Sequence record: MZ779063.1
Length of the DNA stretch: 64,000 bases
Direction: 5' to 3' (one strand)
The number at the start of each line of letters is the position of its first letter. Position 1 is the first letter of the stretch. Below the pieces are notes generated by a model. That model was not told the origin of the DNA and searched no databases. It worked only from the letters and a program-made list of their open reading frames with translations. Positions 14,471 through 36,996 of the stretch are shown here, piece by piece. Position numbers and translations under genes: made by a program.

Positions 14471-14472
14471 TA

Positions 14473-15817: not shown

Positions 15818-15821
15818 TATA

Positions 15822-15856
15822 ATCCCAATACCTATTACATCAATAGGTATTGGGAT
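15822..15856. terminator. intrinsic terminator between convergent genes
   Basis: ATCCCAATACCTATT/AATAGGTATTGGGAT perfect 15-bp stem. Confidence 0.8.
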
Positions 15857-15872
15857 AAATTTAAATTATTTT

Positions 15873-16169: not shown

Positions 16170-16295
16170 TTATTTTTATTATTCATTATAATGATTATAA
16201 GAAATATGTTTTATTTAAGAAATATGAAAAAATTATTGAACCATAATAACTTATCTTATATAAGTATGAATCTATAAGGAGATGAGAATTTATTT

Positions 16296-18230: not shown

Positions 18231-18252
18231 ATAATTGAATGAGGTATTTATT

Positions 18253-19698: not shown

Positions 19699-21210
19699 AT
19701 GAAAATAGATATGATCAACGTTGATCAAATTATTACAGCCTATGAAGCTAAAGAAGTTACCAATCCTATTTTCTTTGATTCAGGAACTTTACCTAAAGAA
19801 GACGGTTTATTCTCATATGAAATATTTGGTTTAATAGGTACTGATGAAAGAAAGAATAATGTGGGTTGGATTAATTTAGGTGGTAAATACTTAAATCCTG
19901 TAGCTTATAAAGCTATGAAAGAATTAGATAAGAATATCGATTTATGTATTCAAGGATCTGATTACTTTAAAATTGAAAAAGGACAATTAGTTCCAGATGA
20001 AAATGGTGAAACTGGATTAAATTTCCTATACGATAATTATGAAAATCTTAAATTTAGAAAAAATGATTCTCGTATCCGAAATGAAAAAATTGATATGCTT
20101 AAAAACACTCCTAAAGATAGAATATTCACAGATAAATGGTTAGTTATTCCTGCTTTCTATCGTGACTTTAACCCTAATGAAACTTCAGGAGAAATTCAAG
20201 ATACTGAAGAAATAAATGATATGTATGCGAGTATTTTAAGATCTGTAGATTCAATTAGTTTTAACTCATTTGATTTTGTAGCTAATACGACTAAATATAA
20301 TATTCAAAATAAATTATTTGAAATATACGTTAAATTAACTTCAGGTGAACTATCAGGTAAAACTGGTATGATGCAAAGAAATATTTTAGGTAAGACAGTA
20401 GATAATAGTACTCGTTCAGTTATTTCATCACCTAAAATCAATTCAAATAAATGGAATGAAATGCAAATTGAATTCGGTCAATTAGGTGTTCCATTAACTC
20501 AATTAGTAACATTGTTCTTACCTTTCTTTAGTAAATATATTATAGACTTTATTGAAATTCATAAAGATGCTTTCCAAACTGCTACTGGAACTGATGAAAA
20601 GGAATTAACATTAGAAGAAGTATATGAACAATTTGATGATAAATCTATTAAGAATATGTTAGAATACTTTATTAAAGACCCTAATGAAAGATTTAGTCCT
20701 ATATATGTAAATGATAGACAAGGTAAACGTCATAAAGTTAAATTATTTGAAAATACTTTAGGTAGAACTTTTACTGTAATTGATTTACTTTATATAGCTG
20801 CTACAGAAATATGTGAAGATAAGTATGTAGTTTATTCAAGATATCCTATTGAAAATTTCTTGAATGTGGCTCCTGCTAAAATTAAAATACTAACTACAGT
20901 TGATACAATTCCAGAAATTACTTTAGATGATATTGTACTTAAAGATTATCCTAAAGTTGTTCATGAATATCCTGTTGATGAAGATGTATTTATAGATACT
21001 GCTATTATACACAACAGTTATGCCGGAGCACTTGGTGCAGATTTTGACGGTGATATGATCTCTATTAGATCTTTATGGACAGTTGAAGCTAATAAAGAAG
21101 CTAATAAACTTCTTAATAAGAAAACTAACTATCTAAACTACACTGGTAATTCAGTACGTAATTTGGGTAACGAATCGGTACAAGCTTTATATTCATTAAC
21201 TAAAGAATAA
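19699..21210 (+). CDS. rpoC: phage multisubunit RNA polymerase beta-prime N-terminal/catalytic subunit
   Basis: DGLFSYEIFG, LGKTVDNSTRSVI, SRYP, GADFDGDM catalytic motif; virion versus non-virion RNAP not resolved. Confidence 0.9.
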   Translation: MKIDMINVDQIITAYEAKEVTNPIFFDSGTLPKEDGLFSYEIFGLIGTDERKNNVGWINLGGKYLNPVAYKAMKELDKNIDLCIQGSDYFKIEKGQLVPDENGETGLNFLYDNYENLKFRKNDSRIRNEKIDMLKNTPKDRIFTDKWLVIPAFYRDFNPNETSGEIQDTEEINDMYASILRSVDSISFNSFDFVANTTKYNIQNKLFEIYVKLTSGELSGKTGMMQRNILGKTVDNSTRSVISSPKINSNKWNEMQIEFGQLGVPLTQLVTLFLPFFSKYIIDFIEIHKDAFQTATGTDEKELTLEEVYEQFDDKSIKNMLEYFIKDPNERFSPIYVNDRQGKRHKVKLFENTLGRTFTVIDLLYIAATEICEDKYVVYSRYPIENFLNVAPAKIKILTTVDTIPEITLDDIVLKDYPKVVHEYPVDEDVFIDTAIIHNSYAGALGADFDGDMISIRSLWTVEANKEANKLLNKKTNYLNYTGNSVRNLGNESVQALYSLTKE

Positions 21211-21690: not shown

Positions 21691-21714
21691 TCTAAAAATA
21701 TTCTATTTTATGAT

Positions 21715-21728
21715 TAAATATATATTAT
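21715..21728 (+). promoter_or_regulatory. early-type promoter TAAATATATATTAT
   Basis: Exact copy; no clear downstream hairpin. Confidence 0.7.
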
Positions 21729-21814
21729 AAAAATAGATGTAATTAAATATATTGAAAGATGTTGTTTTATATGTAAAGTTTTAGAAGAATCTAATAAGGG
21801 AGCTGAAATAGATA

Positions 21815-22297
21815 ATGATATATTACAAAAATAAAGTAAATGGTGAAATATACGAAGTTAATGATATTCATAGAAAAGATGATGCTTTTTATTATGTGTT
21901 TGGTAATGAATTTAAAAAAGAAAGAATAGGATTATATGAATCAGTGGGTAAAAAAATTGATTTATTTGATAAAGATAAAGGACATAAAGAATTAAACTTC
22001 CAATTAAATTATGACTCATCTAGATTATTTTTAGTTACACATATGAAATATGATAATAATAATCCTTTTGCACCTAAAGCAGTAGATTTAAAGAATCAAA
22101 ATTTTGTCGCATCCGATTCTTCAGAAGATCTTTACTATATATTATATAAAAGAATGTGTAATGCAATAGATATACCTTTATTAAATTATAATGTATTATT
22201 AAAAGAATTTAATTTTGATAATGAAGATATATTTAAAATAATATCAGAAGATTGTAAAGAAGTAAAAGATTTTAAAATTAGAAATCTTTTTAAATAA
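21815..22297 (+). CDS. hypothetical protein, tag family (close paralog of 23025-23516)
   Basis: Starts YYKNKVNGEIYEV; ends KDFKIRNLFK. Confidence 0.8.
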   Translation: MIYYKNKVNGEIYEVNDIHRKDDAFYYVFGNEFKKERIGLYESVGKKIDLFDKDKGHKELNFQLNYDSSRLFLVTHMKYDNNNPFAPKAVDLKNQNFVASDSSEDLYYILYKRMCNAIDIPLLNYNVLLKEFNFDNEDIFKIISEDCKEVKDFKIRNLFK

Positions 22298-22312
22298 AAG
22301 GAGAAATTTTAA

Positions 22313-23014
22313 ATGGAAAATATTAAATTGTATAAAAATCTAGAAAATGGTGATAAATTTACTTTATCTAAAGATGAAATTAATAATGGTAGATTTCTTT
22401 ATAAAGTCATGAAACAAATAAAAAGTAGTTTTTACCCATATTATAATTATGAAGACCAACCCATTACAACCAATGGAAACTCTTATTTAATTAATAAACA
22501 ACTGAATTTTCATTTTTATACACATTCTGATATTATTATAAATTTTAAAAATTTAATTGGAATAGATGAAGATATAATAATTAAGAGTAATGAAAATAAA
22601 GAAAGAAATATTTCATCTTCAATTGTTTGTTTCTCTGATTCCAATACAGATAATGATGGAATTTATGAAAATATATTTCAAATTGTTTTAAATACAAAAA
22701 AGACTAAGAAAATAATTCGTATGCTAGATAAATATAAAAGTGATAAATATAAAATATCTTCCTGTACAATGGATAAAAATGAAGTACATTTTAAAGTTAG
22801 TTTCAAACAAGATTATTTGTCTGATAAGAATAATGACGTTTATGATTCTCTAGATGAATTAATATATTATATATTAAAAGATCTTAGAATTAAGATCGAC
22901 AATTCGTATATGTATTTTATGGATTATCTAAGATGGAATTTGGAATTTATTGCTGAAGAAATTACTGATGAGGAAGAAATTAAAAATTACTTAATTAAAG
23001 AAAAATTTAAATAA
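22313..23014 (+). CDS. hypothetical protein, tag family
   Basis: Starts LYKNLENGDKFTL; ends EEITDEEEIKNYLIKEKFK. Confidence 0.8.
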   Translation: MENIKLYKNLENGDKFTLSKDEINNGRFLYKVMKQIKSSFYPYYNYEDQPITTNGNSYLINKQLNFHFYTHSDIIINFKNLIGIDEDIIIKSNENKERNISSSIVCFSDSNTDNDGIYENIFQIVLNTKKTKKIIRMLDKYKSDKYKISSCTMDKNEVHFKVSFKQDYLSDKNNDVYDSLDELIYYILKDLRIKIDNSYMYFMDYLRWNLEFIAEEITDEEEIKNYLIKEKFK

Positions 23015-23024
23015 GGAAGTGTAA

Positions 23025-23516
23025 ATGGATATGATATATTATAAAAATAAAGTAAATGGTGAAATATATGAAGTTAATAATATTCATAGAAAAGATGATG
23101 CATTTTATTATGTATTCAATAATGAATTTAAAAAAGAGAATTCGTCTTTTTATAAATCTTATGGTAAAAATATTGATTTATATGATGAAGACGTAGGAAG
23201 TATAAAATTGGAGTTTTTCTTAATTTATGATTCTATTAATCTTAATTTAACTACACACTTTTCTTGGGATTTTAATAATATTCCTTTTATACCTAAAATT
23301 ATAGAATTAACAAACCAAAATCTTGTCATATCAGACTCTTCAATTGATCTTTATTATTTATTCTATAAAAGAATATGTGATGTGATAGATATAAATATGG
23401 CATATTATAATATTCCATTAGAAAAATTTAATTTTGATAATGGAGATATATTTGAAATAATTTCAGAAGATTGTAAAGAAGTAAAAGATCTTAAAGTTAG
23501 AAATCATTTTAGATAA
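23025..23516 (+). CDS. hypothetical protein, tag family (close paralog of 21815-22297)
   Basis: Starts YYKNKVNGEIYEV; ends KDLKVRNHFR. Confidence 0.8.
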   Translation: MDMIYYKNKVNGEIYEVNNIHRKDDAFYYVFNNEFKKENSSFYKSYGKNIDLYDEDVGSIKLEFFLIYDSINLNLTTHFSWDFNNIPFIPKIIELTNQNLVISDSSIDLYYLFYKRICDVIDINMAYYNIPLEKFNFDNGDIFEIISEDCKEVKDLKVRNHFR

Positions 23517-23521
23517 GGAGA

Positions 23522-23707
23522 TTGATAAATATGAGAAAAGAAATTAGAAAAAATGAAAGTAAACAATTGACTTTACAAGAAAAATGGGAAATTGATGCAG
23601 AATTATACAGAGAGAAAAATAAAGACAAGAAAAAAATAAAAGGGCCAATTATAGGAAAGAAAGTTTCTAAAGAAGAAATGGAAAGAATCTTAAAAGGAGA
23701 AGAATAA
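23522..23707 (+). CDS. small basic hypothetical protein
   Basis: AAGGAG RBS; true start probably ATG 23531. Confidence 0.7.
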   Translation: MINMRKEIRKNESKQLTLQEKWEIDAELYREKNKDKKKIKGPIIGKKVSKEEMERILKGEE

Positions 23708-23708
23708 A

Positions 23709-24362
23709 ATGTTTAATCACAATATCTTACTATATAAACCTATTAGCATTGATTATAATGATTTTATTGAGTTAAACAAAGAAAAATATAAAAATGATAG
23801 AGAATATATTAAAATGATAAATGTATTTAACTTAATGGAACTGTTAAAAATAGACTCTTTTAAAGATAAAACTTTCTTTGAAACTGAATGTAAATTAAAA
23901 TTAAGAGGTTATGATGAATATAAAAATATAAAAGTGGTTTACAATCAATCATTAGACAGTGATCCAATATTCTCTAATTTAAAAAACTTTAATGCAGAAT
24001 TAGATATTATAAGTAAAGAAAGAGATAATACTTATATGACTGAAGAATTATTATATGAATACAATATGATGAAAATGAGCACACATATAAATGATAAAGC
24101 TAACACTATTACAATTAAAATAAAAAATTTCATTAATTCAAATAAAGAAAATTTTAATAACGATTTTGAATTCCTTATTAAAGAATTTGAAAATAATTTA
24201 TTAAAGAATTTAACAGACCTCCATAAATATGAAGACTTACAACTTCTAATTAATAGTGAATATCACAGTTTAAAAGATATTAGTGTATATAATGAAAAAA
24301 TATTTAGACCTGCTACTGATAAAGAGTTTAAGAATTATTTAGTTAAAAAAGGATTTAGATGA
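23709..24362 (+). CDS. hypothetical protein, tag family
   Basis: Ends FRPATDKEFKNYLVKKGFR. Confidence 0.8.
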   Translation: MFNHNILLYKPISIDYNDFIELNKEKYKNDREYIKMINVFNLMELLKIDSFKDKTFFETECKLKLRGYDEYKNIKVVYNQSLDSDPIFSNLKNFNAELDIISKERDNTYMTEELLYEYNMMKMSTHINDKANTITIKIKNFINSNKENFNNDFEFLIKEFENNLLKNLTDLHKYEDLQLLINSEYHSLKDISVYNEKIFRPATDKEFKNYLVKKGFR

Positions 24363-24372
24363 AAATATGTAT

Positions 24373-24386
24373 TAAATATATATTAT
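24373..24386 (+). promoter_or_regulatory. early-type promoter TAAATATATATTAT
   Basis: Exact copy; perfect hairpin 24393-24423 follows. Confidence 0.7.
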
Positions 24387-24455
24387 AAAAATGAGATAAT
24401 GAATTAATATAATTCATTATCTCTATATTAATTTAATTAGGAGAGTGAAAAAGAT

Positions 24456-25064
24456 ATGGATTTAAAAGAGAATAAATTTTATTATAATAAAGATATTAAT
24501 GAGCTTTTTATAATTGGTAAGGATGAAAGTGATATTAACGATAAGATAAATAAATTCTATTATAAAAAATTATTAGAAAAAAATTTAGATTATCATGGTT
24601 TAATTAATAATCTTTATTATAATAGAAATATAAATTTTGATTTAATGGATGATGACGATATATATTTTAGTAATATGTATAATGGAATTAGAGAATATAT
24701 TAAGGTGAGTTATGTAGAATTTTCATGTACAAATTTTGAAGATAATGAAGTAATATTACAGTTAGATACTTTTATTGATAAAAGCAATGATAAAAATCTT
24801 TTAGAAGTTCATAAAGATTCGCATGGTGTTACCATAACAATGGTAAAAGGTTTTTATGAAAAAGATCTTATAAATTATAATGAATACAAAAATATTTTAG
24901 ACAAATTATCTGATCTGTTTGACACAATGCTTAAAGAAGAAAATGATGGAAATATTAAAATCTTTATAAATGATATTGATATATTTGAACCTTATGCATA
25001 TTTTAGAGAGTTAGAAGACGAAAGAGGAATTAAAAATATTTTGGTTAAGAAAAATTTTATATAA
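24456..25064 (+). CDS. hypothetical protein, tag family
   Basis: Starts FYYNKDINELFII; ends YFRELEDERGIKNILVKKNFI. Confidence 0.8.
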   Translation: MDLKENKFYYNKDINELFIIGKDESDINDKINKFYYKKLLEKNLDYHGLINNLYYNRNINFDLMDDDDIYFSNMYNGIREYIKVSYVEFSCTNFEDNEVILQLDTFIDKSNDKNLLEVHKDSHGVTITMVKGFYEKDLINYNEYKNILDKLSDLFDTMLKEENDGNIKIFINDIDIFEPYAYFRELEDERGIKNILVKKNFI

Positions 25065-25078
25065 AGGAGATAGATATA

Positions 25079-25705
25079 ATGGATGTAAATGAATATATAA
25101 ATAATCATGATTTTTATAGAGTTGGGAATGACGGTCAAGTATTTGTATTTAATAAAGATATATCAAAAGATGAATTAAATTCTAAAATATTTTCTAAATT
25201 ATTTGCATGCGAAAATATAGGAATTTTATTGTCTGAATATGGTTATTATGTAATAGATGAATATAATGTATTCTTAAGAAATAATGATAAAATATTATTA
25301 GTTGAAAATATGACTATTGATCTAAGTTTAATTAAAGATGATCTAATTGAATTAAATTTTGCATTAATTATTAAATCTAGTCTTCCTTCAAAAATTGGTC
25401 CTTTTGAAAAAGATAAAGGTAATCATGATGATTTTTATTATTATGATACTATTATTCAAATAGAAAATAAAGATAACTTTCAACATGAATTAATTTCCCA
25501 TATAACAAATCATTTTAATAAAATGAGTGATGTTGATTTAATGCTTTTAACTGCTAAAAATGAAATTAAATTTAATAAAGATTATAGTATTAATAAAAAA
25601 TGTATTGATTTTAAATGTAATTTTAATGAAATTTATAAAATACTTAATAAATTAGAAGATGAAAAAGAAATTAAGAAATATCTAACTAAAGAAAATTTTA
25701 AATAA
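25079..25705 (+). CDS. hypothetical protein, tag family
   Basis: Starts FYRVGNDGQVFVF; ends LEDEKEIKKYLTKENFK. Confidence 0.8.
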   Translation: MDVNEYINNHDFYRVGNDGQVFVFNKDISKDELNSKIFSKLFACENIGILLSEYGYYVIDEYNVFLRNNDKILLVENMTIDLSLIKDDLIELNFALIIKSSLPSKIGPFEKDKGNHDDFYYYDTIIQIENKDNFQHELISHITNHFNKMSDVDLMLLTAKNEIKFNKDYSINKKCIDFKCNFNEIYKILNKLEDEKEIKKYLTKENFK

Positions 25706-25718
25706 GGATAGAATAAAT

Positions 25719-26282
25719 ATGAATTTAGATAATATTGTAATATTAAAAAAGAAAAATGATGGTAAATTTGACAATAACAAATTTATAGAATTTAATCATA
25801 ATAATATTGATAATGATGAAATATTAAGTCTTTCTTTAATTACTCTATATACAAGCGTATATGCATTTTATATAAAAAGTGATATAAAATATGACAATTT
25901 TGTTAGTTATTTAGCTAATTTTTATTTAGAAATAGATGGGTATTTAAAAGGACCTTTAAATATAACACATGATGAAAATAATAGAATGCTTATAATTTAT
26001 AAAGGAAGACTACCACAAGATATTTTCAAAGTTAGAGAATTTAACGTAAATACTAAATTATATGCGTATTTAATTAAAGATGATGAATACAATACGGTAG
26101 AAGATGATCTAATCGAATCAGTAATCAATGGATCAGAATATATAATGAATAGTGAAAGAATTAAGCCAAAAATTATTATTAATGGAGCATATAAGGATAT
26201 TACGAATGTATTAAATTATTTTGAAAAACTTACTGATGAAAAAGAAATTAAAAAATATCTAATTAAAAAAAATTTTAAGTAG
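25719..26282 (+). CDS. hypothetical protein, tag family
   Basis: Ends YFEKLTDEKEIKKYLIKKNFK. Confidence 0.8.
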   Translation: MNLDNIVILKKKNDGKFDNNKFIEFNHNNIDNDEILSLSLITLYTSVYAFYIKSDIKYDNFVSYLANFYLEIDGYLKGPLNITHDENNRMLIIYKGRLPQDIFKVREFNVNTKLYAYLIKDDEYNTVEDDLIESVINGSEYIMNSERIKPKIIINGAYKDITNVLNYFEKLTDEKEIKKYLIKKNFK

Positions 26283-26299
26283 AATAAGGAGGATTAAAT

Positions 26300-26923
26300 T
26301 TGGATAAGTCATTATATGTATCGGATATATTCGATGAGAAAGTTATAGGAAGAAAGGATCTTAATAAAGATGAACTTTTTGATTTGTCATTTAATACAAT
26401 TTTAAATAATTCTGCTGACACTAGATTTAATAAAGAAGGAATTAGGTTAATGTTATCATTTTCAAAGGGATTAATTTTAAAATTTGATTATGCAGACAAA
26501 TATTTTTATGTGAAAGATTTTATATTTTTAATAGAAAAAGTTGATGGTAACTATGAATTTAATTTTACATTAAGTATTCCAGAATTTGCAGACAGTGAAA
26601 TTGAAATTGAATTAGGAATTTTTGAATCGGATAAAGGTCATAGAGAATTTTATTTTAATGATTTTTCTTATTATAAAGAAGGAAAAACTTTATTAGAAAG
26701 AGCTAAAGAATATTTAATATACGATATTTTTAATAATTATGGTGTTATTTTTAGTATTTTTTCATTAAAAGACAAAAATAGAATTTTAACAGACGATAAT
26801 TTTATCATAGATAATAATGATATAGATGAAATTTATAGTCTAAAAAATATAGATAACGTATTTAGAGAAGTAACAAACGAAAAAGAAATTAAAGAATACT
26901 TAGTTCAGAAAGGATTTAGATAA
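26300..26923 (+). CDS. hypothetical protein, tag family
   Basis: AAGGAGG RBS with TTG start; ends FREVTNEKEIKEYLVQKGFR. Confidence 0.8.
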   Translation: MDKSLYVSDIFDEKVIGRKDLNKDELFDLSFNTILNNSADTRFNKEGIRLMLSFSKGLILKFDYADKYFYVKDFIFLIEKVDGNYEFNFTLSIPEFADSEIEIELGIFESDKGHREFYFNDFSYYKEGKTLLERAKEYLIYDIFNNYGVIFSIFSLKDKNRILTDDNFIIDNNDIDEIYSLKNIDNVFREVTNEKEIKEYLVQKGFR

Positions 26924-26924
26924 A

Positions 26925-27536
26925 ATGAAAATAGACTTAGAATCTTATGAATACTATTACCATGATGAAGAAAAAATATTAGTTCCAGTATCATTAGATA
27001 TGAAGAAAGAAAATGCAAATGAGTTAATGACGTTTGAATATTATAAGAAAGTTTTTAAAAGTTTTAATCATAATATATTTCATAAAAGAATTCACGATGA
27101 TAATATACTATTTAGTACTCGATTAAATAAAGTGATTAACAAAAGTACTGGTATATCAATACCTGCTTATGATTTATATATACATTTTGAAATAGATAAC
27201 TCATTAAATATTATTTCCTTAGAATTAAGTTTTTCAATGGATACAAATCACTTTGATTTATTTAGAACATTCTATAAAGATAAAATAGAAGTTATAAATT
27301 TTTCAAAGACAGATTTTTTAAACTATAATCAAAATGTAGATAATTTAGAAGATAAAATGGCATGTCTATTAGCTAAATTATTCTTTGATATGCACAATGA
27401 TGAAAATGAAGATATTGAAATATATGTAGATAATTTTTACCATGAATCACTAGACATAGCTAAGCCATATAAATATTTTAGATTGATGGGAGAAAAAGAA
27501 ATAAAAAATCTAGCAACTAAAAAAACTTTTAAATAA
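26925..27536 (+). CDS. hypothetical protein, tag family (similar to 24456-25064)
   Basis: Ends PYKYFRLMGEKEIKNLATKKTFK. Confidence 0.8.
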   Translation: MKIDLESYEYYYHDEEKILVPVSLDMKKENANELMTFEYYKKVFKSFNHNIFHKRIHDDNILFSTRLNKVINKSTGISIPAYDLYIHFEIDNSLNIISLELSFSMDTNHFDLFRTFYKDKIEVINFSKTDFLNYNQNVDNLEDKMACLLAKLFFDMHNDENEDIEIYVDNFYHESLDIAKPYKYFRLMGEKEIKNLATKKTFK

Positions 27537-27593
27537 TTTAATTAACTTTCTTTTATATTAATAAATACAATGAAAGAGAGTTGAATATAATAA

Positions 27594-28373
27594 ATGTCTG
27601 AAACTAATGAAATTGATTTAATATCACAAATCAATGATATGATGGATGAATATAAGATGTTAGTAAAATTTAAAGATAAAATGGAAAATAAAGAAATTCA
27701 ATTAGAAAATCGTATACAGGATTTAACTAAGAATTTGAAATATCCTAAACATACATTCGTATCTAATATGGAAGCTAACATTATTAGTGTAGAAAAAGAA
27801 ATTAAAGACACTATTATGCAAATGAAAAATGTTAAAAAAGATATTATTGACTTAACTATGAAAGCTCAGAAAATGGCTGAAGATGATGAATCTGAAGATA
27901 ATTATAAAACTCTTGCTAAAAATGTACTTAATGAGCTTAATAATATGTCTAATAAAGATATTTTAAACAGTATGATGGAACCTGAAGAAGTAAATGATGA
28001 AGATACTGATTTTAGTGAAGAATTAGATGCAAAATTATCGCAATTAGATGAAGAAGAGAAATCTATCAATAAAGAAGTAGATCAAAAAGAAGAATTGAGT
28101 CAAGAAATTAATGAGTTAGATCAACAAGATTTATCTTCTATATTAAAAGTCTATAAAGGTACATTACAATTCTTTGTTATAGGAGATTCTCCTGAAGAAT
28201 ATGAATTAGTAGTTGCCGATATGGATATGAATATTATTGAAGAAGATGAAATGGAAGATGAATATCCAGAATTATTTACTATGACTAGAGATCTTATCTT
28301 TGAAGATATTGAAGGTAATGATGAAATAGTTAAAGATGAATTTGGTAATATTTATCAAAAAGCAGAATTTTAA
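27594..28373 (+). CDS. acidic coiled-coil hypothetical protein
   Basis: N-terminal heptads and a very D/E-rich C-terminal half. Confidence 0.8.
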   Translation: MSETNEIDLISQINDMMDEYKMLVKFKDKMENKEIQLENRIQDLTKNLKYPKHTFVSNMEANIISVEKEIKDTIMQMKNVKKDIIDLTMKAQKMAEDDESEDNYKTLAKNVLNELNNMSNKDILNSMMEPEEVNDEDTDFSEELDAKLSQLDEEEKSINKEVDQKEELSQEINELDQQDLSSILKVYKGTLQFFVIGDSPEEYELVVADMDMNIIEEDEMEDEYPELFTMTRDLIFEDIEGNDEIVKDEFGNIYQKAEF

Positions 28374-28380
28374 ATTATTT

Positions 28381-28416
28381 TACCCCATAATATATTAATG
28401 CAATGTATTATGGGTA
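28381..28416 (+). terminator. hairpin/terminator
   Basis: TACCCCATAATA/TATTATGGGTA stem with one bulge. Confidence 0.55.
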
Positions 28417-28442
28417 TCTATTATATAGGAGATGAATTAGGT

Positions 28443-28568
28443 ATGCTAAAAAGATTATATGAATTATTAACTAGAAAAAGATTTGAAAAGAAACTATATG
28501 AATTTAAATTTAGTTATCAAGACCATGAGCATCTTAATGAAGTTCATGAATTTAGTAAAAACAATTAA
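28443..28568 (+). CDS. 41-aa small protein not in the ORF track
   Basis: AGGAG upstream; MLKRLYELLTRKRFEKKLYEFKFSYQDHEHLNEVHEFSKNN; fills the intergenic gap and its stop overlaps the next RBS. Confidence 0.55.
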   Translation: MLKRLYELLTRKRFEKKLYEFKFSYQDHEHLNEVHEFSKNN

Positions 28569-28571
28569 GGA

Positions 28572-28982
28572 GTGATATTATTGCTATCAGAATACAGATT
28601 AAATAGTAATAAAGAAAATATTAAACAACTATTAAGAGATTATGGTTTTAAAAAAGATTCTTATACTAAAGCTTTAATATATAGAAAACGTGTAACTGAT
28701 CCGAATGATATTTTATTCATAGTGGCTGAAGTGGTTATTGAAACTAATTCAGATCTAGTTAAATTAAATTACTATGATAGTAAACATAATAGATTTAATC
28801 CTTCTAATGAGTCGCCAGAAGTTCAAAAAGGTTTAAGTATATTAGAAGATATGAAAGAAAAAGAATTATTAATTGAACCAGAATTAACTCAAAATAAAGA
28901 AGAAAAAGAAGTTCTCGATAGACTTAAAGAACAACGTGAAGAAATGGAAAATGGTCAAGTATCACCCAATTCTGAAAATTAG
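28572..28982 (+). CDS. hypothetical protein
   Basis: AAGGAG RBS; true start probably TTG 28581. Confidence 0.75.
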   Translation: MILLLSEYRLNSNKENIKQLLRDYGFKKDSYTKALIYRKRVTDPNDILFIVAEVVIETNSDLVKLNYYDSKHNRFNPSNESPEVQKGLSILEDMKEKELLIEPELTQNKEEKEVLDRLKEQREEMENGQVSPNSEN

Positions 28983-28984
28983 AA

Positions 28985-28998
28985 TAAATATATATTAT
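28985..28998 (+). promoter_or_regulatory. early-type promoter TAAATATATATTAT
   Basis: Exact copy; hairpin 29008-29037 follows. Confidence 0.7.
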
Positions 28999-29062
28999 AA
29001 AAATGTTATCCCAATACTATTAAATTAGTATTGGGATTATTATAATAAAAGGAGTTAAATAA

Positions 29063-29839
29063 ATGGAGAAAATTAACAAATACTACATTAGTAAATCGAA
29101 AGATGAATTTATAGAATTAACTTTCAATGAAAATGAAACACTCTATTTTGACTTTAAGTGGAAAGTTTTAAGTGAGCTATTCACTACAATGCAAATAAAT
29201 TATAATAAGAGATTTCTTATATCTCATGAAGAACATGATGACAATGGTTTAGTTGGTCTTAGAATAAATTTCAATGCTTTTCCCACAGTTAAATACAAAT
29301 ATAAAGGTAAGAAAAATAAAATGGAACTTCTTATATACGCTATAATACGCTTTAGTCTAAATGAAGAAGACGATAATTATATTAAGTTTAAAGCTGTTCC
29401 TTTATATAATAATAGTGAAATAGGGAAAAGATTATTTAGTAAAAGATCTGGTATATTTGATGATAATGGTGAACTAGATTTACCGCATGACTTTAATGAA
29501 GAAGTTATGATTCGCTTTTTAAAATATTTTAAAAGCCATATACAAAAAGGAAAAAGACCTTTAGAACTCAAGGACGATTTACACAAGATGTTTACTACTA
29601 CAAATAAATTAATTTTTGAATTACTAGATCAGATACAAGATCATTCAGATATTGAATTTCTTATTGCACCCGATTGGGATTTTAGTGGTAAAGAAATGGA
29701 AAAAGAAAAAGGTTTTAGTTTTGAAAAAGAATATGATAAGTATATCAGTTTAAATGATTTCGATGTTGATGCATATTTTAGAGAAATAACTGATGAGAAA
29801 GAGATTAAAAAATTTAAAGTTAAGAAAGGATTTTCCTAA
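29063..29839 (+). CDS. tag-family paralog (29063-33880 array)
   Basis: Starts KYYISKSKDEFIEL; contains LDQIQDHSDIEF; ends YFREITDEKEIKKFKVKKGFS. Confidence 0.8.
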   Translation: MEKINKYYISKSKDEFIELTFNENETLYFDFKWKVLSELFTTMQINYNKRFLISHEEHDDNGLVGLRINFNAFPTVKYKYKGKKNKMELLIYAIIRFSLNEEDDNYIKFKAVPLYNNSEIGKRLFSKRSGIFDDNGELDLPHDFNEEVMIRFLKYFKSHIQKGKRPLELKDDLHKMFTTTNKLIFELLDQIQDHSDIEFLIAPDWDFSGKEMEKEKGFSFEKEYDKYISLNDFDVDAYFREITDEKEIKKFKVKKGFS

Positions 29840-29840
29840 T

Positions 29841-30659
29841 ATGAAAAATAATACAAAATATTTTATAGATAAAAAAAGAGATGAATTAATTGAAATTGAT
29901 AAAGAATATCTTAATCGATATGAGTATATTGCACACGTATTAACTGTCATTGATATGAATAAGCTTTTATATATTGAAGATCATGCTAGATCCTTTATAA
30001 ATGGTATTAATATTGAAGAAAATGATGTGGGAAATGGATTGACTTTTAATAATATAGAAATTCATAATAATATCCATTTCAAAAATATAAATAGTAAAAA
30101 TAATGCGTATAAAAATTTTAATACCGATTTTTATATAAACTTCTTTATTGATAGAATGGATAAAGTTAAAACTCAGAATTTTAAGTTAAAATTTAATTTT
30201 TATAATTCAATATATAAAGAATATTTTAATAAAATTACCAATAATTTATTAAATGAAGATAATTTAGTCAATGAAGGAGTAAATAAAGAAATAAGATCTC
30301 TTATGAATTTTGAATTATTTAAAAAAGAGTTATATAATACTAAATACAATAATAGTGAATATTTAAATCTTTTTGAAAATTCATCATATATGAAGGACAA
30401 TGTTATTGGATTTATAAATAAATTTGAAGGATTATTTTCTAGTGTAATATACCAAAATAACCTTAGTGTATTAATGACTCTTTATGAAATAAAATACATG
30501 TATGAAGATGACATAGATTTTTATATTAATTTTTATAATGAAAATTATGGTTTAGTTAATATATTAGAATTAATCGAAAGTGATGAAAATGATTTATTTA
30601 AAGAAATTAAAACAGAAAAAGAAATGAAAGCGTTTAAAGTTAGAAAAGGATTCAAATAA
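29841..30659 (+). CDS. tag-family paralog (29063-33880 array)
   Basis: ATG 29841 uses AAAGGA inside the upstream tag (ORF track starts at 29793); starts KYFIDKKRDELIEI; ends FKEIKTEKEMKAFKVRKGFK. Confidence 0.8.
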   Translation: MKNNTKYFIDKKRDELIEIDKEYLNRYEYIAHVLTVIDMNKLLYIEDHARSFINGINIEENDVGNGLTFNNIEIHNNIHFKNINSKNNAYKNFNTDFYINFFIDRMDKVKTQNFKLKFNFYNSIYKEYFNKITNNLLNEDNLVNEGVNKEIRSLMNFELFKKELYNTKYNNSEYLNLFENSSYMKDNVIGFINKFEGLFSSVIYQNNLSVLMTLYEIKYMYEDDIDFYINFYNENYGLVNILELIESDENDLFKEIKTEKEMKAFKVRKGFK

Positions 30660-30680
30660 TATAAAGAAAGGATTTTTGTA

Positions 30681-31421
30681 ATGGAATATAATAATTACTA
30701 TAGATATAAATTAGATGGAAAAATACTTCACTTTGATATGGATAGAACTGATTTACGTAGAGATAAATTGGCTGAAATATTTACTAAAGTTAAGATGGAA
30801 TATATTTATAAAGATAAAAAAATGATTAAAAAAGCAAGAAACTTTATTTACCGATCTAATCTTTCTTTAGAGTATTCTCATTTTAAAGATAAAGTATTTG
30901 TAATCAAACAAATTTCTAAAATGCTAAGTAAAAACAATGTAAGGGATTTATTAATTTACGATACGGATCTTAGTTTAGAATTTAATTCTATTTTAGACGG
31001 TGGTATATTTAAAAAAGATTTTCCAGAAGGATCCTTTTATGAAAAAATAGAAAGTAATATGAATAGAAAATATTTAATTTTAAGTGATAATATAAGACAC
31101 ACTAGTGAAAGTTTTGTTGATTTATATGATAAAGATTATATTTTAAATTTTGAAGAAGTAGAATTGCTAGTCAAAGAATTTAATAAAACTCTTTTAAATT
31201 ATCTTATGGATTTAATGAGTTATGGAAATCTAGAATTAAAAGTTAGAAAATCGGAGTTAGCATATTTTATGACAGGAATATATACAAAAATGGAAGAAAA
31301 CGAAGATAAGTTATTCCCTATATTTGATTATAAATTTTTACTTAATGAATCTGGATTATTTGAAGAGATTACAGATGAGAAAGTTATTAAAGAATATTTA
31401 GTGAAAAATAATTTTAAATAA
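30681..31421 (+). CDS. tag-family paralog (29063-33880 array)
   Basis: Starts YYRYKLDGKILHF; ends FEEITDEKVIKEYLVKNNFK. Confidence 0.8.
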   Translation: MEYNNYYRYKLDGKILHFDMDRTDLRRDKLAEIFTKVKMEYIYKDKKMIKKARNFIYRSNLSLEYSHFKDKVFVIKQISKMLSKNNVRDLLIYDTDLSLEFNSILDGGIFKKDFPEGSFYEKIESNMNRKYLILSDNIRHTSESFVDLYDKDYILNFEEVELLVKEFNKTLLNYLMDLMSYGNLELKVRKSELAYFMTGIYTKMEENEDKLFPIFDYKFLLNESGLFEEITDEKVIKEYLVKNNFK

Positions 31422-31437
31422 AAAGGAGATCAATGTA

Positions 31438-32220
31438 ATGAGTATAAATAAAAGTCATAAAAAATATTTTTTGAGTAAAATGACAGATGATTTATTTGAA
31501 GTTACTAACTTATACAGATATAATATAAATGAAGATTATTTATATCTACCTCAATTACTTTCTAATTTACAAGTAAAAAGTAATGAAGAAATAAATATAC
31601 TTTCTGAAGAGATTGTTGGTAAAGATGATAATGGAGAGAATTTATGGTCAGGAACTATATCAGCTGGATATATTTTTCCAGTTATCAAATATAATGTTAA
31701 TAATAAAAAGACAACGAATATACTTATTATTGATTTTGATATTATTTTCAACGAATCAATAGAAAATGAAAACTATTTAAAAGTTAGAATTGAAAATCCA
31801 TACTCTTCAGGTATAAATTCAATAATTTTTAATAGCGTTATTGGCAATATATTAGATGAATCCAATTCTTTAAAAGTGCCTTTTAGATTTCATATAAATA
31901 GCATGGAAGATTTAATATCAGATTTTAATAATGGTACAGAAAATAATTTTAGAAATAATAAAGATTTATACCAAATATTAGTTGAAGTAAATAGTTCTAT
32001 ATTGGAACTTTTATCACAAATTAGAGATCATTTTGATATAGAATTCTTTGTATCAGATTCTTGTTTCTCGCATATACCGGAGAATGATAAAAGAGATAAT
32101 GATGATATAGATGATAGATACTATAATTTATTTGACGAATATAAAATATCTGGAGTATTTGAAGAGATTATGGATGAAAAGATTATTAAAAAATATTTAG
32201 TGAAAAATAATTTTAAATAG
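31438..32220 (+). CDS. tag-family paralog (29063-33880 array)
   Basis: Starts KKYFLSKMTDDLFEV; contains LSQIRDHFDIEF; ends FEEIMDEKIIKKYLVKNNFK. Confidence 0.8.
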   Translation: MSINKSHKKYFLSKMTDDLFEVTNLYRYNINEDYLYLPQLLSNLQVKSNEEINILSEEIVGKDDNGENLWSGTISAGYIFPVIKYNVNNKKTTNILIIDFDIIFNESIENENYLKVRIENPYSSGINSIIFNSVIGNILDESNSLKVPFRFHINSMEDLISDFNNGTENNFRNNKDLYQILVEVNSSILELLSQIRDHFDIEFFVSDSCFSHIPENDKRDNDDIDDRYYNLFDEYKISGVFEEIMDEKIIKKYLVKNNFK

Positions 32221-32235
32221 AAGGAGATCAATATA

Positions 32236-33030
32236 ATGGGTGTAATTAAAAGTGATAAAAAATATTTCTTATGTAAAATAAATGATGAATTATTTGAAGT
32301 TGATAAAAATCATAGAGATTCATTTTTATATGACTATTTACCTTTAATAATAGCTGAAAAAATAATTAATTCGACTGAAAAAGATTCATATGAAACTAGA
32401 GCAATGGATGTTTATTATAAAAAAGAAGATAATGTAATTGAAGGTAATTTAAAATTTTTAGCAAGATGTTTACTTCCTGTCCTGTATAATTTCAATAATA
32501 AAAATTCATTTAAAACCGTTATGACTCTCGCAAATTTTAAATTTAAAAGGGATGCTAATAAATCTACTTTTAGTATAGATAAAAATAGTGTTAATGATAA
32601 AATACTATTTCAAATGAGACCTTTAGGAAATGAAATTGATGATATTTTATTTAATAGTATTATAAGTGACCTTTTGAACGAAGATGACGAAATAGAAATG
32701 AAACAAATGTTATTAGTTGGTAATTTTGAAAAATTATTAAACGAAATTGATAGTCAAAATATAAAACATCATGATGATTTTAAAATTTTAATCAAAGATA
32801 TATTCAATATTTATCTTAATTTATTAAAATCCTTAAGACATCATCTTAATATTGAATTTTTCTTTTCTGAATCTTCTTTTCTAGACACGTTAAATGTTTA
32901 TAATTTTGATATTATTAATAAAGATAGTTATAAAATAAATATTTTTGAAGATGATTTAGATGGAATATTTGAAGAAATTACCGATGAAAAATTTGTTAGA
33001 GAATATTTAGTGAAAAATAATTTTAAATAA
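32236..33030 (+). CDS. tag-family paralog (29063-33880 array)
   Basis: Starts KKYFLCKINDELFEV; contains LKSLRHHLNIEF; ends FEEITDEKFVREYLVKNNFK. Confidence 0.8.
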   Translation: MGVIKSDKKYFLCKINDELFEVDKNHRDSFLYDYLPLIIAEKIINSTEKDSYETRAMDVYYKKEDNVIEGNLKFLARCLLPVLYNFNNKNSFKTVMTLANFKFKRDANKSTFSIDKNSVNDKILFQMRPLGNEIDDILFNSIISDLLNEDDEIEMKQMLLVGNFEKLLNEIDSQNIKHHDDFKILIKDIFNIYLNLLKSLRHHLNIEFFFSESSFLDTLNVYNFDIINKDSYKINIFEDDLDGIFEEITDEKFVREYLVKNNFK

Positions 33031-33043
33031 AGGAGTTAATATA

Positions 33044-33880
33044 ATGAGTGATGTATATTATGAATATAAATTGAGAAATAAAATATTTAAGTTTAATGAT
33101 GAAATTGAAGATTTAAGCGATACCGGTATTAAGAACTTTATAACATATGAAAATAATATTTTAAGCAATTTATTGACAAATATATTAATTGATCATACTG
33201 TCTATGGTTTTATACCGAATATATCCTATGAAGAAAATAAAAATGATGGTGTTGATAAAGAATATGTAAAAAAGGTAAATTTAAGTATTTTAAAACATTT
33301 ACCCTTAGTATCATACAGTGTAGGTAATTCAAATATATTAAATGATTTTTCTTTAAATGTCAATTCTGTTGTTGATATTTATAAAAAAGGAAATTTCGAA
33401 GATGAAGAAGGCAATAAAATGATTATACCTAAAGAAAATTTTAAATTGGAGACAAATATAAATATTGATAATTTAGGTGGAAAAATCGATCATGAATTAT
33501 TTAATAAAATATGTGGAGATATTTTTGATCAAGACGAGAATTTTTTATTTTATAAAATGTATGATCATATATTAGAGGAAAATTCTATGTCACTATATGA
33601 GAATATAGGAAATATAAATAATAAATTGGTTTATGAAATTATACTCCGTTTAAATAATAATATTTTATCATTATTTGAAAAAATCAGAAGTCATTTAGAC
33701 GTGAGATTTTATTTAAGAGATAAAGACTTTTATCTTTTCAGTAATGGAGAAATAGACAAAGATTCATTAAGTGACGAATATATTGAAATATCTGAATTTT
33801 TAGGAAAATCATCTTTATTTAAAAAGATTACAGATGAGAAGATTATTAAAAATTATGAAATAAAAGAAAACTTCAAATAA
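33044..33880 (+). CDS. tag-family paralog (29063-33880 array)
   Basis: Starts YYEYKLRNKIFKF; contains FEKIRSHLDVRF; ends FKKITDEKIIKNYEIKENFK. Confidence 0.8.
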   Translation: MSDVYYEYKLRNKIFKFNDEIEDLSDTGIKNFITYENNILSNLLTNILIDHTVYGFIPNISYEENKNDGVDKEYVKKVNLSILKHLPLVSYSVGNSNILNDFSLNVNSVVDIYKKGNFEDEEGNKMIIPKENFKLETNINIDNLGGKIDHELFNKICGDIFDQDENFLFYKMYDHILEENSMSLYENIGNINNKLVYEIILRLNNNILSLFEKIRSHLDVRFYLRDKDFYLFSNGEIDKDSLSDEYIEISEFLGKSSLFKKITDEKIIKNYEIKENFK

Positions 33881-36708: not shown

Positions 36709-36996
36709 TTGATTCTTAATGTTAATAAGACTTTAGATGCTAAATTGGAAAAAGAAATGTATGATGATATTAGAACTGCATTCATTGATAGTACGTTAAC
36801 ACCAATCCGTTATAAAAAATTAGAAGATTTATGTGAAATCCATAATAAAGATATAAAACTTTATTATAACCATGATATGATAGAATCTAAAGAATTAAGA
36901 AAAAGTTTGATTAGATTTTATAAAGAAAATAATTTAGATGAAGACGAATTCATTATAAAGATTAAAAAAGAAGTTATTAAAGATACATTTAAATAG
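36709..36996 (+). CDS. small hypothetical protein, C-terminal tag family
   Basis: GAGGAG RBS with TTG start; ends KKEVIKDTFK. Confidence 0.75.
   Translation: MILNVNKTLDAKLEKEMYDDIRTAFIDSTLTPIRYKKLEDLCEIHNKDIKLYYNHDMIESKELRKSLIRFYKENNLDEDEFIIKIKKEVIKDTFK

What the first reader, a model, noticed from the sequence alone, without database searches (positions are those of the whole stretch)
21815..33880. Conserved N- and C-terminal brackets around hypervariable cores: a polymorphic cargo array
Seen: about 11 tagged ORFs also start with a shared pattern, aromatic-aromatic-x-x-K-x-x-(D/G)-(E/K)-(L/I)-(F/Y)-x-(V/I/F). Examples are YYKNKVNGEIYEV, FYYNKDINELFII, KYYISKSKDEFIEL, KYFIDKKRDELIEI, KYFLSKMTDDLFEV, KYFLCKINDELFEV and YYRYKLDGKILHF. 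They end with F-(E/R/K)-E-I before the tag, and the 130-250 aa between is highly divergent. Inference: the N-terminal beta-hairpin and C-terminal strand/helix may fold into one discontinuous docking domain carrying a variable inserted payload. That would resemble polymorphic effector or anti-defence cassettes, here filling about 12 kb under three early promoters.
Basis: partly seen in the sequence, partly recalled or inferred. Interest (0 to 1): 0.72.

Follow-up and report, generated by a model that had tools for sequence, protein, structure and literature searches.

The report
Tagged early-gene family in Staphylococcus jumbo phage
A 12-kb run of 15 early genes in a Staphylococcus jumbo phage belongs to an undescribed, fast-evolving family of 37 phage proteins that keep the same short start and the same 20-residue tail around very different middles; what they do is unknown, most likely host take-over or counter-defence.

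Summary
The window is Staphylococcus phage vB_SauM-UFV_DC4 (bases 1-64000). Between the virion RNA polymerase beta' gene and an SbcC-like ATPase gene lie 15 ORFs ending in the same 20-residue tail.

Tails are 45% identical between paralogs and middles about 20%. For 93 of 105 pairs the middles show no similarity above shuffled sequences.

The family is larger than the array. 37 of 261 genes carry the tail, always at the exact C-terminus, mostly behind AR9-type early promoters. Three such promoters drive the array.

The family occurs only in Staphylococcus jumbo phages and has no Pfam, PHROG or PDB relative.

The "docking domain plus inserted payload" reading is only partly supported:
- Several members are full-length paralogs.
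- One AlphaFold model is a single globular fold with hairpin, strand and terminal helix as predicted.
- Seventeen tagged proteins lack the N-terminal aromatic pair that marks the motif.
- N/C contact could not be measured.

Orthologs show purifying selection (dN/dS 0.45 in middles, about 0.3 at the ends). Recombination inside the tail-coding DNA adds and removes whole genes. Function is inferred, not shown.

The parts
21713..21740 (+). Early-promoter-like site 1, which heads the unit 21815-24362. A terminator-like hairpin of the preceding gene lies at 21649-21674.
   Evidence: The 20-nt motif is shared with sites 2 and 3 and contains the core of the early promoters annotated in the AR9 record. 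Hairpin.
21815..22297 (+). Tagged ORF, 160 aa, sub-group A. N-motif and tail both present.
   Evidence: It is 66% identical to 23025-23516.
22313..23014 (+). Tagged ORF, 233 aa, sub-group B. Loose N-terminal hairpin only.
23025..23516 (+). Tagged ORF, 163 aa, sub-group A. Recent duplicate of 21815-22297.
   Evidence: DNA repeats D6, D9
23531..23707 (+). Small untagged ORF (58-61 aa) inside the array.
23709..24362 (+). Tagged ORF, 217 aa, sub-group C. Its middle links to sub-groups N and K.
24371..24423 (+). Early-promoter-like site 2, followed by a 14-bp-stem hairpin at 24393-24423. It heads the unit 24456-28373.
24456..25064 (+). Tagged ORF, 202 aa, sub-group D. N-motif present. Full-length paralog of 26925-27536.
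25079..25705 (+). Tagged ORF, 208 aa, sub-group E. Full-length paralog of 26300-26923.
   Evidence: The AlphaFold model failed.
25719..26282 (+). Tagged ORF, 187 aa, sub-group F.
26300..26923 (+). Tagged ORF, 207 aa, sub-group G.
26925..27536 (+). Tagged ORF, 203 aa, sub-group H.
27594..28373 (+). Untagged 259-aa gene. It resembles AR9 gp141 at both termini, by eye only with no alignment run. I read it as the older resident of this slot.
28398..28982 (+). Untagged small ORFs: a 56-aa leftover of a gene that is 113-136 aa in S6, PB50, SA1 and LY01, and a conserved 133-aa gene at 28581-28982.
28983..29037 (+). Early-promoter-like site 3, followed by a 12-bp-stem hairpin at 29008-29037. It heads the unit from 29063 through the SbcC-like gene to the terminator-like hairpin at 37175-37206.
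29063..29839 (+). Tagged ORF, 258 aa, sub-group I. N-motif present.
29841..30659 (+). Tagged ORF, 272 aa, sub-group J. N-motif present. The mechanical ORF starts at 29793; the annotated start is 29841.
30681..31421 (+). Tagged ORF, 246 aa, sub-group K. N-motif present. Its C-terminal 85 aa are 36% identical to 31438-32220.
31438..32220 (+). Tagged ORF, 260 aa, sub-group I. This is the modelled member.
32236..33030 (+). Tagged ORF, 264 aa, sub-group I.
33044..33880 (+). Tagged ORF, 278 aa, sub-group I. It holds an internal tail-like stretch inside an insertion.
33937..36672 (+). SbcC/SMC-like ATPase, 911 aa, annotated 'virion associated protein' in relatives. It is the conserved right-hand neighbour of the array.
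19699..21210 (+). Virion RNA polymerase beta' N-terminal part. It is the conserved left-hand neighbour of the array.
13811..18831 (+). Four more tail-bearing genes outside the stated range: 13811-14470, 14473-15084, 15176-15817 and 18235-18831.
1669..3435 (+). Three small tail-bearing genes (68-92 aa) without the N-motif: 1669-1875, 2342-2620 and 3208-3435.
36709..36996 (+). A 95-aa tail-bearing gene just after the SbcC-like gene.

Best explanation
The array is the largest cluster of a clade-specific superfamily of soluble, early-expressed phage proteins. DC4 has 37 members, and 15 of them are here.

Origin (inferred). The family grew by repeated tandem duplication in the slot between the virion RNA polymerase beta' gene and the SbcC-like ATPase gene. 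The middles then diverged fast, mostly past the reach of sequence comparison.

What is kept (shown). Two short segments stay under stronger constraint: an N-terminal aromatic beta-hairpin, and a C-terminal strand plus helix that always ends one residue after a phenylalanine.

Likely role (inferred). The C-terminal segment is a shared handle that gives all members one common property, most simply binding to one common phage or host partner. The hairpin and adjoining strand are part of the common fold frame. The diversified middles recognise different targets during the first minutes of infection, in host take-over or counter-defence.

Dynamics (shown). The 60-nt tail-coding DNA also serves as a homology patch. 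Recombination within it deletes, inserts and reshuffles whole genes between related phages.

In short: conservation, the extent of the family, promoter motifs, selection figures and the recombination junction are shown. Early expression, a shared partner and the take-over or counter-defence role are inferred.
For: - Identity: the window is 100% identical to MZ779063.1.
- Tail: an iterated profile finds it on 37 of 261 genes, all on the + strand and all at the exact C-terminus. One of about 200 internal decoys is hit.
- Column counts: F at -2 in 34/37, K at -10 in 30/37, K at -13 in 28/37.
- Protein-level constraint: codons vary synonymously. dS in the tail (0.27) is close to dS in the middles (0.33), while dN is half (0.078 against 0.151).
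- N and C ends go together: an aromatic pair lies in residues 2-14 of 20/37 tagged against 17/224 untagged proteins, p=2e-10.
- Full-length paralogy inside sub-groups, plus weak chains between sub-groups.
- AlphaFold model of 31438-32220: pLDDT 75.9, pTM 0.80, one alpha/beta globule. The hairpin and the C-terminal strand-helix are among its most confident parts.
- Predicted-structure library: same-group members TM 0.66-0.91; a 206-aa member of another group TM 0.37-0.43.
- Selection: dN/dS is 0.45 in middles, 0.33 and 0.29 at the ends, and 0.19-0.20 in the neighbouring conserved genes.
- Early promoters: three 20-nt sites match the early promoters annotated in AR9. 29/37 tagged against 99/224 untagged genes lie in predicted early units, p=1e-4.
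- Lineage-specific expansion: AR9 has five small untagged genes in the same slot.
- Restricted range: the family appears only in Staphylococcus jumbo phages among 50,697 phage records and 1.8 billion representative proteins.
- Recombination: the PB50 junction is 86% like gene D before the tail and 72/72 identical to the Machias F-G junction from mid-tail on.
- Array size ranges from 7 to 15 tagged genes in eight genomes.
Against: - No function is shown. No member matches any Pfam, PHROG or solved structure.
- Common descent of all sub-groups is not proven. Most core-only profile comparisons are negative.
- The only cross-group structural match is weak, and I identified its sub-group from its length alone.
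- The second model failed (pLDDT 34.6).
- Early expression rests on a promoter motif, not on transcripts of this phage.
- dN/dS below 1 gives no sign of an arms race at the level of whole middles.
- A shared binding partner for the tail is pure inference.
Confidence: 0.6

Rival explanations
1. The N-terminal hairpin and the C-terminal strand/helix fold together into one small discontinuous docking domain, and the middles are unrelated payload domains inserted into it.
For: - Predicted secondary structure of the ends is as proposed, and they are among the most confident parts of the model.
- A low-confidence acidic linker (residues 213-220) precedes the C-terminal unit.
- The N and C elements co-occur.
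- Most middles have no detectable similarity.
Against: - The model is one globule (pTM 0.80).
- Sub-groups are full-length paralogs.
- The cross-group TM of 0.37-0.43 exceeds what about 45 shared end residues could give.
- 17/37 tagged proteins lack the aromatic pair, and three of them have only 68-92 residues.
- Contact between the ends could not be measured.
Confidence: 0.2
2. The tail is a free-standing linear signal read from the free C-terminus. It would be an address for sorting (capsid packaging, membrane, a protease or chaperone) and would work independently of the rest of the protein. This overlaps with the 'shared handle' part of the best explanation.
For: - The tail is always at the exact C-terminus, with F at -2 in 34/37.
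- It occurs on proteins of 68 to 297 residues, with and without the N-motif.
- It is more constrained than the middles.
Against: - None of the array proteins is among the 15 proteins found in DC4 virions, although that survey was shallow (PMC10638138, Table 3).
- Genes for packaged proteins are usually late, and these sit behind early-type promoters.
- The close relative PALS_2 is listed as lacking chimallin, so a phage-nucleus import signal is unlikely (10.1101/2023.02.24.529968).
- No known signal of this form was recovered by any library search.
Confidence: 0.3
3. The conservation is at nucleic-acid level. The 3' ends of the genes would be kept alike as recombination, translation-coupling or RNA elements, and the shared peptide would be a by-product.
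For: - The tail-coding 60-70 nt is a dispersed direct repeat of 62-85% identity.
- A crossover lies inside it.
- Tails of neighbouring genes resemble each other and are exchanged between phages.
Against: - Synonymous and conservative codon changes are common in the tail.
- dS in the tail (0.27) is about that of the middles (0.33), while dN is halved.
- The same peptide is kept in clusters 150 kb apart, with lower DNA identity.
Confidence: 0.07
4. Chance or composition. In a 20-25% G+C genome rich in K, N, I, Y and F, such ends arise without selection.
For: The 8-nt promoter core alone is no commoner than in shuffled sequence (37 found, 38.7 expected). Genome composition is extreme.
Against: - The relaxed N-motif occurs 9 times, always at an N-terminus of a tagged array gene, and nowhere else in 261 proteins.
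- Tail identity is 45% against an 8% control.
- The decoy hit rate is 1 in about 200.
Confidence: 0.01

Closest known systems
Lineage-specific multigene families of large DNA viruses with a variable body and a short conserved C-terminal docking motif. The example I have in mind is the poxvirus ankyrin-repeat proteins with a C-terminal PRANC/F-box-like motif (from general knowledge; not retrieved by any tool here).
   Same: There are many paralogs in tandem arrays. They evolve fast and vary in number between close relatives. A short C-terminal segment is the best-conserved part, which suggests one shared partner and many targets.
   Different: There are no ankyrin repeats and no PRANC/F-box match (Pfam searches). 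The host is bacterial. An N-terminal motif is also conserved. The partner is unknown.
Polymorphic toxin and immunity cassette arrays (Rhs, CdiA-CT with orphan modules; SUKH/Imm poly-immunity loci).
   Same: Arrays of divergent cassettes are bounded by a short conserved coding motif, and that motif also acts as a recombination site.
   Different: Here both ends are conserved and the long part varies. There is no large delivery region, no toxin or immunity domain, and no alternating toxin/immunity pairs. Every gene is a stand-alone tagged ORF separated by 1-21 nt.
Hyperplastic early-gene regions of T4-type phages, with repeated promoter-stem-loop cassettes that mediate gene shuffling (from general knowledge).
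   Same: Small early genes of unknown function are packed behind early promoters that are followed by stem-loops. Repeated sequence at gene borders drives gain and loss.
   Different: The repeated patch here is inside the coding sequence and is kept as a peptide. The genes are paralogs of one another rather than unrelated ORFs.
Early transcription units of Bacillus phage AR9/PBS1, transcribed by the injected virion RNA polymerase.
   Same: The promoter core is the same as in the AR9 record's annotated early promoters. The genome neighbourhood is the same: beta' N-part, this slot, SbcC-like ATPase, DNA polymerase.
   Different: AR9 has five small untagged genes in the slot. No tail-bearing ORF was found in 33 kb around it.

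Membership tests
Polymorphic toxin / effector cassettes (Rhs, CdiA-CT and the like) | A recognisable toxin or effector domain in the variable part | tested here: not met
   No Pfam family reaches its cut-off for any of the 15 array proteins or the other tagged proteins. PHROGs (10 array members scanned) gave only one weak hit, to a family of unknown function.
Polymorphic toxin / effector cassettes (Rhs, CdiA-CT and the like) | A cognate immunity gene directly after each variable module | tested here: not met
   Each gene is followed after 1-21 nt by another full tagged gene of similar size. There are no alternating small partner ORFs.
Polymorphic toxin / effector cassettes (Rhs, CdiA-CT and the like) | Recombination at the conserved boundary motif that exchanges cassettes | tested here: met
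   The PB50 junction switches parent inside the tail-coding DNA. Tails are exchanged between neighbours.
SUKH / Imm poly-immunity arrays | SMI1/KNR4 or another Imm-family domain | tested here: not met
   No such Pfam hit. No PDB fold match with E<0.2.
Viral families with a variable body and a C-terminal docking motif (ANK/PRANC type) | Ankyrin repeats and a PRANC/F-box-like C-terminus | tested here: not met
   No Pfam match. This is an analogy of design only.
AR9-type early (virion RNA polymerase) transcription units | An upstream promoter with the AR9 early core | tested here: met
   Three intergenic sites share a 20-nt motif that contains the core seen in three early promoters annotated in NC_031039. 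The MarsHill preprint reports the same 8-nt core upstream of 29 genes (10.1101/2020.12.14.422802).
AR9-type early (virion RNA polymerase) transcription units | Transcripts appear early in infection | not testable with these tools
   No expression data for these phages were on hand.
Virion-packaged (injected) proteins | Detected in purified particles | tested here: not met
   The DC4 particle proteome lists 15 proteins and none from UFVDC4_00025-00042 (PMC10638138, Table 3). Only 26 peptides were mapped, so absence is weak evidence.
   Structure prediction returns secondary structure and confidence only, and no coordinates were placed in /data.
   Sequence profiles find no link for most sub-group pairs. 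Sub-groups are full-length paralogs. One cross-group structural match has TM 0.37-0.43. The second model failed.

The most novel reading that the evidence does not exclude
The 20-residue C-terminal tail is a dedicated address or handle that marks about one gene in seven of this phage. It would couple some 37 different early proteins to one phage or host machine, with the diversified middles as target-specific adaptors. That would be a bacteriophage counterpart of the 'many adaptors, one docking motif' families of large eukaryotic viruses.
Probability: 0.25. Interest if true: 0.8.

Novelty: new variant of a known kind. Interest (0 to 1): 0.58.

Why it matters
About 14% of the genes of a 263-kb phage of an important pathogen share one terminal peptide, yet every database record calls them 'hypothetical'. 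None of the three genome papers I read mentions the family.

If the tail is a common handle, it gives a single entry point to a large block of the early 'dark matter' of jumbo phages. Identifying the partner of one short peptide would organise 37 genes at once.

The tail-coding DNA acting as a recombination patch also shows concretely how hyperplastic early regions gain and lose genes.

If the family turns out to be only a fast-diverging fold whose ends are its most stable parts, it is still a new protein family with no solved relative.

Tried and rejected
- Pfam, PHROGs and PDB-sequence searches of all array members and the other tagged proteins found nothing above threshold.
- Foldseek of the good model against the PDB gave a best E of 0.23 and TM of 0.25 or less.
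- A profile search of 1.84 billion representative proteins with the sub-group I alignment gave 7 hits, all the same sub-group in Staphylococcus jumbo phages.
- Word-indexed searches gave only 3-9 close orthologs each. Alignments were therefore shallow, and the second AlphaFold job (25079-25705) failed at pLDDT 34.6. I did not use that model for fold search.
- Core-only BLAST, iterative HMM and profile-profile comparisons, including C-proximal and N-proximal slices, added only weak links between sub-groups.
- Charge and pI: tagged proteins (median pI 5.4) do not differ from the rest, so there is no special DNA-mimic signal.
- The 8-nt promoter core alone is not enriched over shuffles. Only the extended intergenic motif is informative.
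- Sigma-70 promoter scan: no enrichment, 178 found against 165 expected.
- Phage-nucleus import signal: rejected, because PALS_2 is listed as lacking chimallin.
- Literature: two full-text searches and three genome papers gave no description of the family.
- I looked for model coordinates to measure N/C contacts and none are provided.

Full report
**Where we are.** The window is bases 1-64000 of Staphylococcus phage vB_SauM-UFV_DC4 (MZ779063.1, 100% identity). DC4 is a 263-kb, 25% G+C jumbo phage of the AR9/PBS1 type with split multisubunit RNA polymerases. The finding's interval lies between the N-terminal part of the virion RNA polymerase beta' subunit (19699-21210) and a 911-residue SbcC/SMC-like ATPase (33937-36672). 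The DNA polymerase gene follows. The same order holds in S6, PB50, MarsHill, Machias, SA1, LY01 and AR9. Every gene of the interval is 'hypothetical protein' in every record.

**The observation.** The interval holds 15 ORFs of 160-278 residues with a common 20-residue C-terminal tail. They are interrupted by untagged genes at 23531-23707, 27594-28373 and 28398/28581-28982.
- Column counts for the 15 tails: F at -2 in 15, K at -10 in 14, K at -13 in 13, E at -14 in 12, D at -15 in 11.
- Codons for the same residue differ between copies, and replacements are conservative, so the conservation is in the peptide.
The pattern as written fits 3 ORFs.
- With one conservative alternative per column the pattern fits 9, and nothing else in any position of 261 DC4 proteins.
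- A leave-one-out matrix ranks array members in the top 7.
- The other six members start with a looser aromatic strand-turn-strand.
- Between the 15 paralogs the last 20 residues are 45% identical on average, against 8% for other proteins of the phage.
- The middles are about 20% identical after optimal alignment, and 93 of 105 pairs are indistinguishable from shuffles at Z<3.

The count of clear N-motifs is 9 rather than 11.

**The family is larger than the array.** An iterated profile of the tail, searched against the last 22 residues of all 261 genes, converges on 37 genes. One of about 200 internal decoy segments is hit.
- All 37 are on the + strand and carry the tail at the exact C-terminus. 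F is at -2 in 34, and K is the last residue in 27.
- They cluster at 1.7-3.4 kb, 13.8-18.8 kb, 21.8-33.9 kb, 36.7 kb, 164-175 kb and 193-200 kb.
- Many members outside the array also begin with the aromatic hairpin.
- An aromatic pair in residues 2-14 occurs in 20/37 tagged and 17/224 untagged proteins (odds ratio 14, p=2e-10).
- Seventeen tagged proteins lack it, including proteins of 68, 75, 92 and 95 residues.

The tail and the hairpin usually travel together, but the tail can stand alone.

**Relations among the middles.** I removed 28 N-terminal and 24 C-terminal residues and clustered the array proteins of seven phages. This gives 14 sub-groups, A to N.
- Within sub-groups the proteins are homologous end to end.
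- 29063, 31438, 32236 and 33044 (sub-group I) align over their whole length at about 30% identity.
- 25079 and 26300 do the same, as do 24456 and 26925.
- 21815 and 23025 are a recent duplicate at 66% identity.
- Core-only profile comparisons add E-G (85% probability), C-N (80%), C-N-K by iteration, a weak I-J link (26%) and a weak A-E link (27%).
- Merged super-groups do not link further.

At sequence level there are about seven to nine unrelated-looking core types. With only 3-21 closely related sequences per profile, this does not exclude common descent.

**Structure.**
- With a 12-sequence alignment, AlphaFold2 models 31438-32220 at mean pLDDT 75.9 and pTM 0.80 as one alpha/beta globule.
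- Strands 8-13 and 19-23 form the N-terminal hairpin. Next come a helix, a five-stranded sheet region and several helices.
- A low-confidence acidic loop follows (residues 213-220), then a short strand at 241-244 (the 'FEEI' segment) and a helix at 247-259 (the tail).
- The hairpin and the C-terminal unit are among the most confident blocks, at 89 and 85-90.
- No solved structure resembles the model. The best Foldseek E is 0.23 and TM is 0.25 or less. A sequence profile finds nothing in the PDB.
- Against predicted viral structures, four sub-group I proteins match at TM 0.66-0.91.
- A 206-residue protein matches at TM 0.37/0.43 (probability 1.0), and a 215-residue protein at 0.26/0.28.
- By length and accession series these two are an E-type and a B-type member. 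That identification is my inference.
- About 45 shared end residues cannot give TM 0.43 on a 206-residue target. At least I and that member share more than the ends.
- The second model (25079-25705) failed at pLDDT 34.6 and was not used.
- The tool returns no coordinates, so the key test, contact between hairpin and terminal strand/helix, could not be run.

**Selection.** I compared DC4 genes with their orthologs in five phages by the Nei-Gojobori method.

| Segment | dN | dS | dN/dS |
|---|---|---|---|
| First 28 codons | 0.072 | 0.220 | 0.33 |
| Middles | 0.151 | 0.333 | 0.45 |
| Last 24 codons | 0.078 | 0.273 | 0.29 |
| SbcC-like gene (neighbour) | 0.088 | 0.453 | 0.19 |
| Untagged gene 27594-28373 | 0.085 | 0.427 | 0.20 |

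The middles change about twice as fast as the ends and are about twice less constrained than the neighbours. They are still under purifying selection, so 'hypervariable' overstates it. Similar dS in tail and middle argues against a nucleic-acid-level constraint.

**Transcription signals.**
- The only long intergenic gaps of the array (159, 93 and 80 nt) each hold the same 20-nt motif. It contains the core of the early promoters annotated in the AR9 record.
- The MarsHill preprint reports the same 8-nt core upstream of 29 genes (10.1101/2020.12.14.422802).
- All other gaps are 1-57 nt, and most carry a ribosome-binding site.
- Long hairpins follow promoters 2 and 3. Terminator-like hairpins lie at 21649-21674, 28384-28414 and 37175-37206.
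- Genome-wide, 37 intergenic sites match the 13-nt core with at most one mismatch.
- 29 of 37 tagged genes lie in the units behind them, against 99 of 224 untagged genes (p=1e-4).

Actual timing is not shown.

**Origin and dynamics.**
- AR9 has only five small untagged genes in this slot and no tail-bearing ORF in 33 kb. One of them, gp141, resembles the untagged gene 27594-28373 at both termini. That is by eye; I ran no alignment.
- The tagged genes are therefore a lineage-specific expansion on both sides of an older resident.
- Searches of 50,697 phage records, 5.8 billion protein clusters and 1.84 billion representatives find relatives only in Staphylococcus jumbo phages and a few metagenome contigs.
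- Array content differs between relatives by whole genes: 15 tagged genes in DC4, 14 in S6 and MarsHill, 13 in PB50, 12 in Machias, 9 in SA1, 7 in LY01 and 10 in a metagenome contig.
- The tail-coding 60-70 nt is a dispersed direct repeat of 62-85% identity.
- In PB50, gene D is followed directly by gene G. The junction is 86% identical to DC4 gene D up to the tail. From mid-tail on it is identical at 72 of 72 positions to the F-G junction of Machias.
- A crossover inside the tail-coding DNA therefore removed, or in the other direction added, the genes between.
- Tails of neighbouring genes also resemble each other and are exchanged between phages.

**What it most likely is.** It is a clade-specific, early-expressed, fast-diverging superfamily that grew by tandem duplication.
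- The ends are kept either because they frame the fold or because they provide a common property.
- The strict C-terminal position of the tail, its presence on proteins of very different size, and its stronger constraint make a shared handle for one partner the most economical reading.
- The early position and the gain and loss between close relatives fit host take-over or counter-defence.
- None of that function is shown.

Against other readings:
- The DC4 particle proteome (15 proteins, 26 peptides) contains none of the array proteins (PMC10638138). This weakly argues against packaging.
- PALS_2 lacks chimallin (10.1101/2023.02.24.529968). This argues against a nucleus-import signal.
- Charge and pI are unremarkable.

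**Comparison with known systems.** The design recalls viral multigene families with a variable body and a conserved C-terminal docking motif. It also recalls cassette arrays that recombine at a conserved boundary motif. Every defining domain of those families was searched for and not found, so these are analogies and not memberships. The promoter-hairpin units and recombination-driven gene turnover recall the hyperplastic early regions of T4-type phages. Here, however, the repeated patch is a coding peptide.

**Novelty and verdict.**
- The family is not in Pfam or PHROGs, has no solved relative, and is not mentioned in the DC4, MarsHill or jumbo-phage overview papers I read.
- I rate it a new variant of a known kind: a viral lineage-specific multigene family with an unusually sharp, genome-wide terminal tag.
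Its structural interpretation is partly supported and partly contradicted. Its functional guess remains open.

**Self-check under the operators' line.**
- In notebook entry 1 I summarised the tail as a 20-position pattern string. The line asks for column shares rather than a majority string. The counts are and only those are used here.
- Consensus lines printed by the alignment tools were not used.
The rest of the phage genome was read locus by locus, not assembled.

Noticed in passing
L007:7180-7345 (PB50), compared with L009:10420-10585, window:24945-25110 and window:26165-26330: The PB50 D-to-G gene junction is a mosaic. It follows gene D (86%) up to the tail, then is 72/72 identical to the Machias F-to-G junction. 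The crossover lies inside the tail-coding DNA.
   Followed up: yes
window 33392-33446, inside ORF 33044-33880: An internal tail-like stretch (a copy of DNA repeat family D5) sits within an insertion that the three paralogs lack. It may be a trace of an old recombination or gene fusion.
   Followed up: no
window 24393-24423 and 29008-29037: Long perfect hairpins (14 and 12 bp stems) lie directly downstream of early-promoter-like sites 2 and 3. They look like 5'-leader structures, or promoter-stem-loop units of the kind described in T4-type hyperplastic regions.
   Followed up: partly
window 28373-28581: DC4 lacks most of a gene that is 113-136 aa in S6, PB50, SA1 and LY01, together with a 41-aa ORF next to it. 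This is one deletion, and a 56-aa ORF (28398-28568) is left.
   Followed up: partly
window 1669-3435, 13811-18831 and 36709-36996; L004 3306-13677 and 32169-38743: Another 22 genes carry the same C-terminal tail. Several begin with the same aromatic hairpin, and three small ones (68-92 aa) do not.
   Followed up: yes
window 29793-29841: The mechanical ORF of the tenth tagged gene starts 48 nt inside the previous gene. The annotated start at 29841 leaves a 1-nt gap, as at 23707/23709 and 26923/26925. This suggests translational coupling.
   Followed up: no
window 19699-21210, compared with L008 946-4082 and L009 4649-6481: The virion RNA polymerase beta' N-part is uninterrupted in DC4, S6, PALS_2 and SA1. 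In MarsHill and Machias it is annotated as joined from three pieces, and the MarsHill interval also holds an annotated homing endonuclease gene.
   Followed up: no
window 15873-16148 (- strand): This lone minus-strand 91-aa gene (UFVDC4_00019) sits among plus-strand tagged genes. It is one of the 15 proteins detected in DC4 particles (PMC10638138, Table 3).
   Followed up: no
window about 50000-52000: GC and AT skew change sign and coding switches to the minus strand. This is a boundary between the early plus-strand block and a block of large minus-strand genes.
   Followed up: no
L013 (ENA ERZ27252336, contig k141_911626): A metagenome contig of 37.5 kb carries a 10-member version of the array in the same neighbourhood. 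More relatives therefore exist in public assemblies than in the phage collection.
   Followed up: partly
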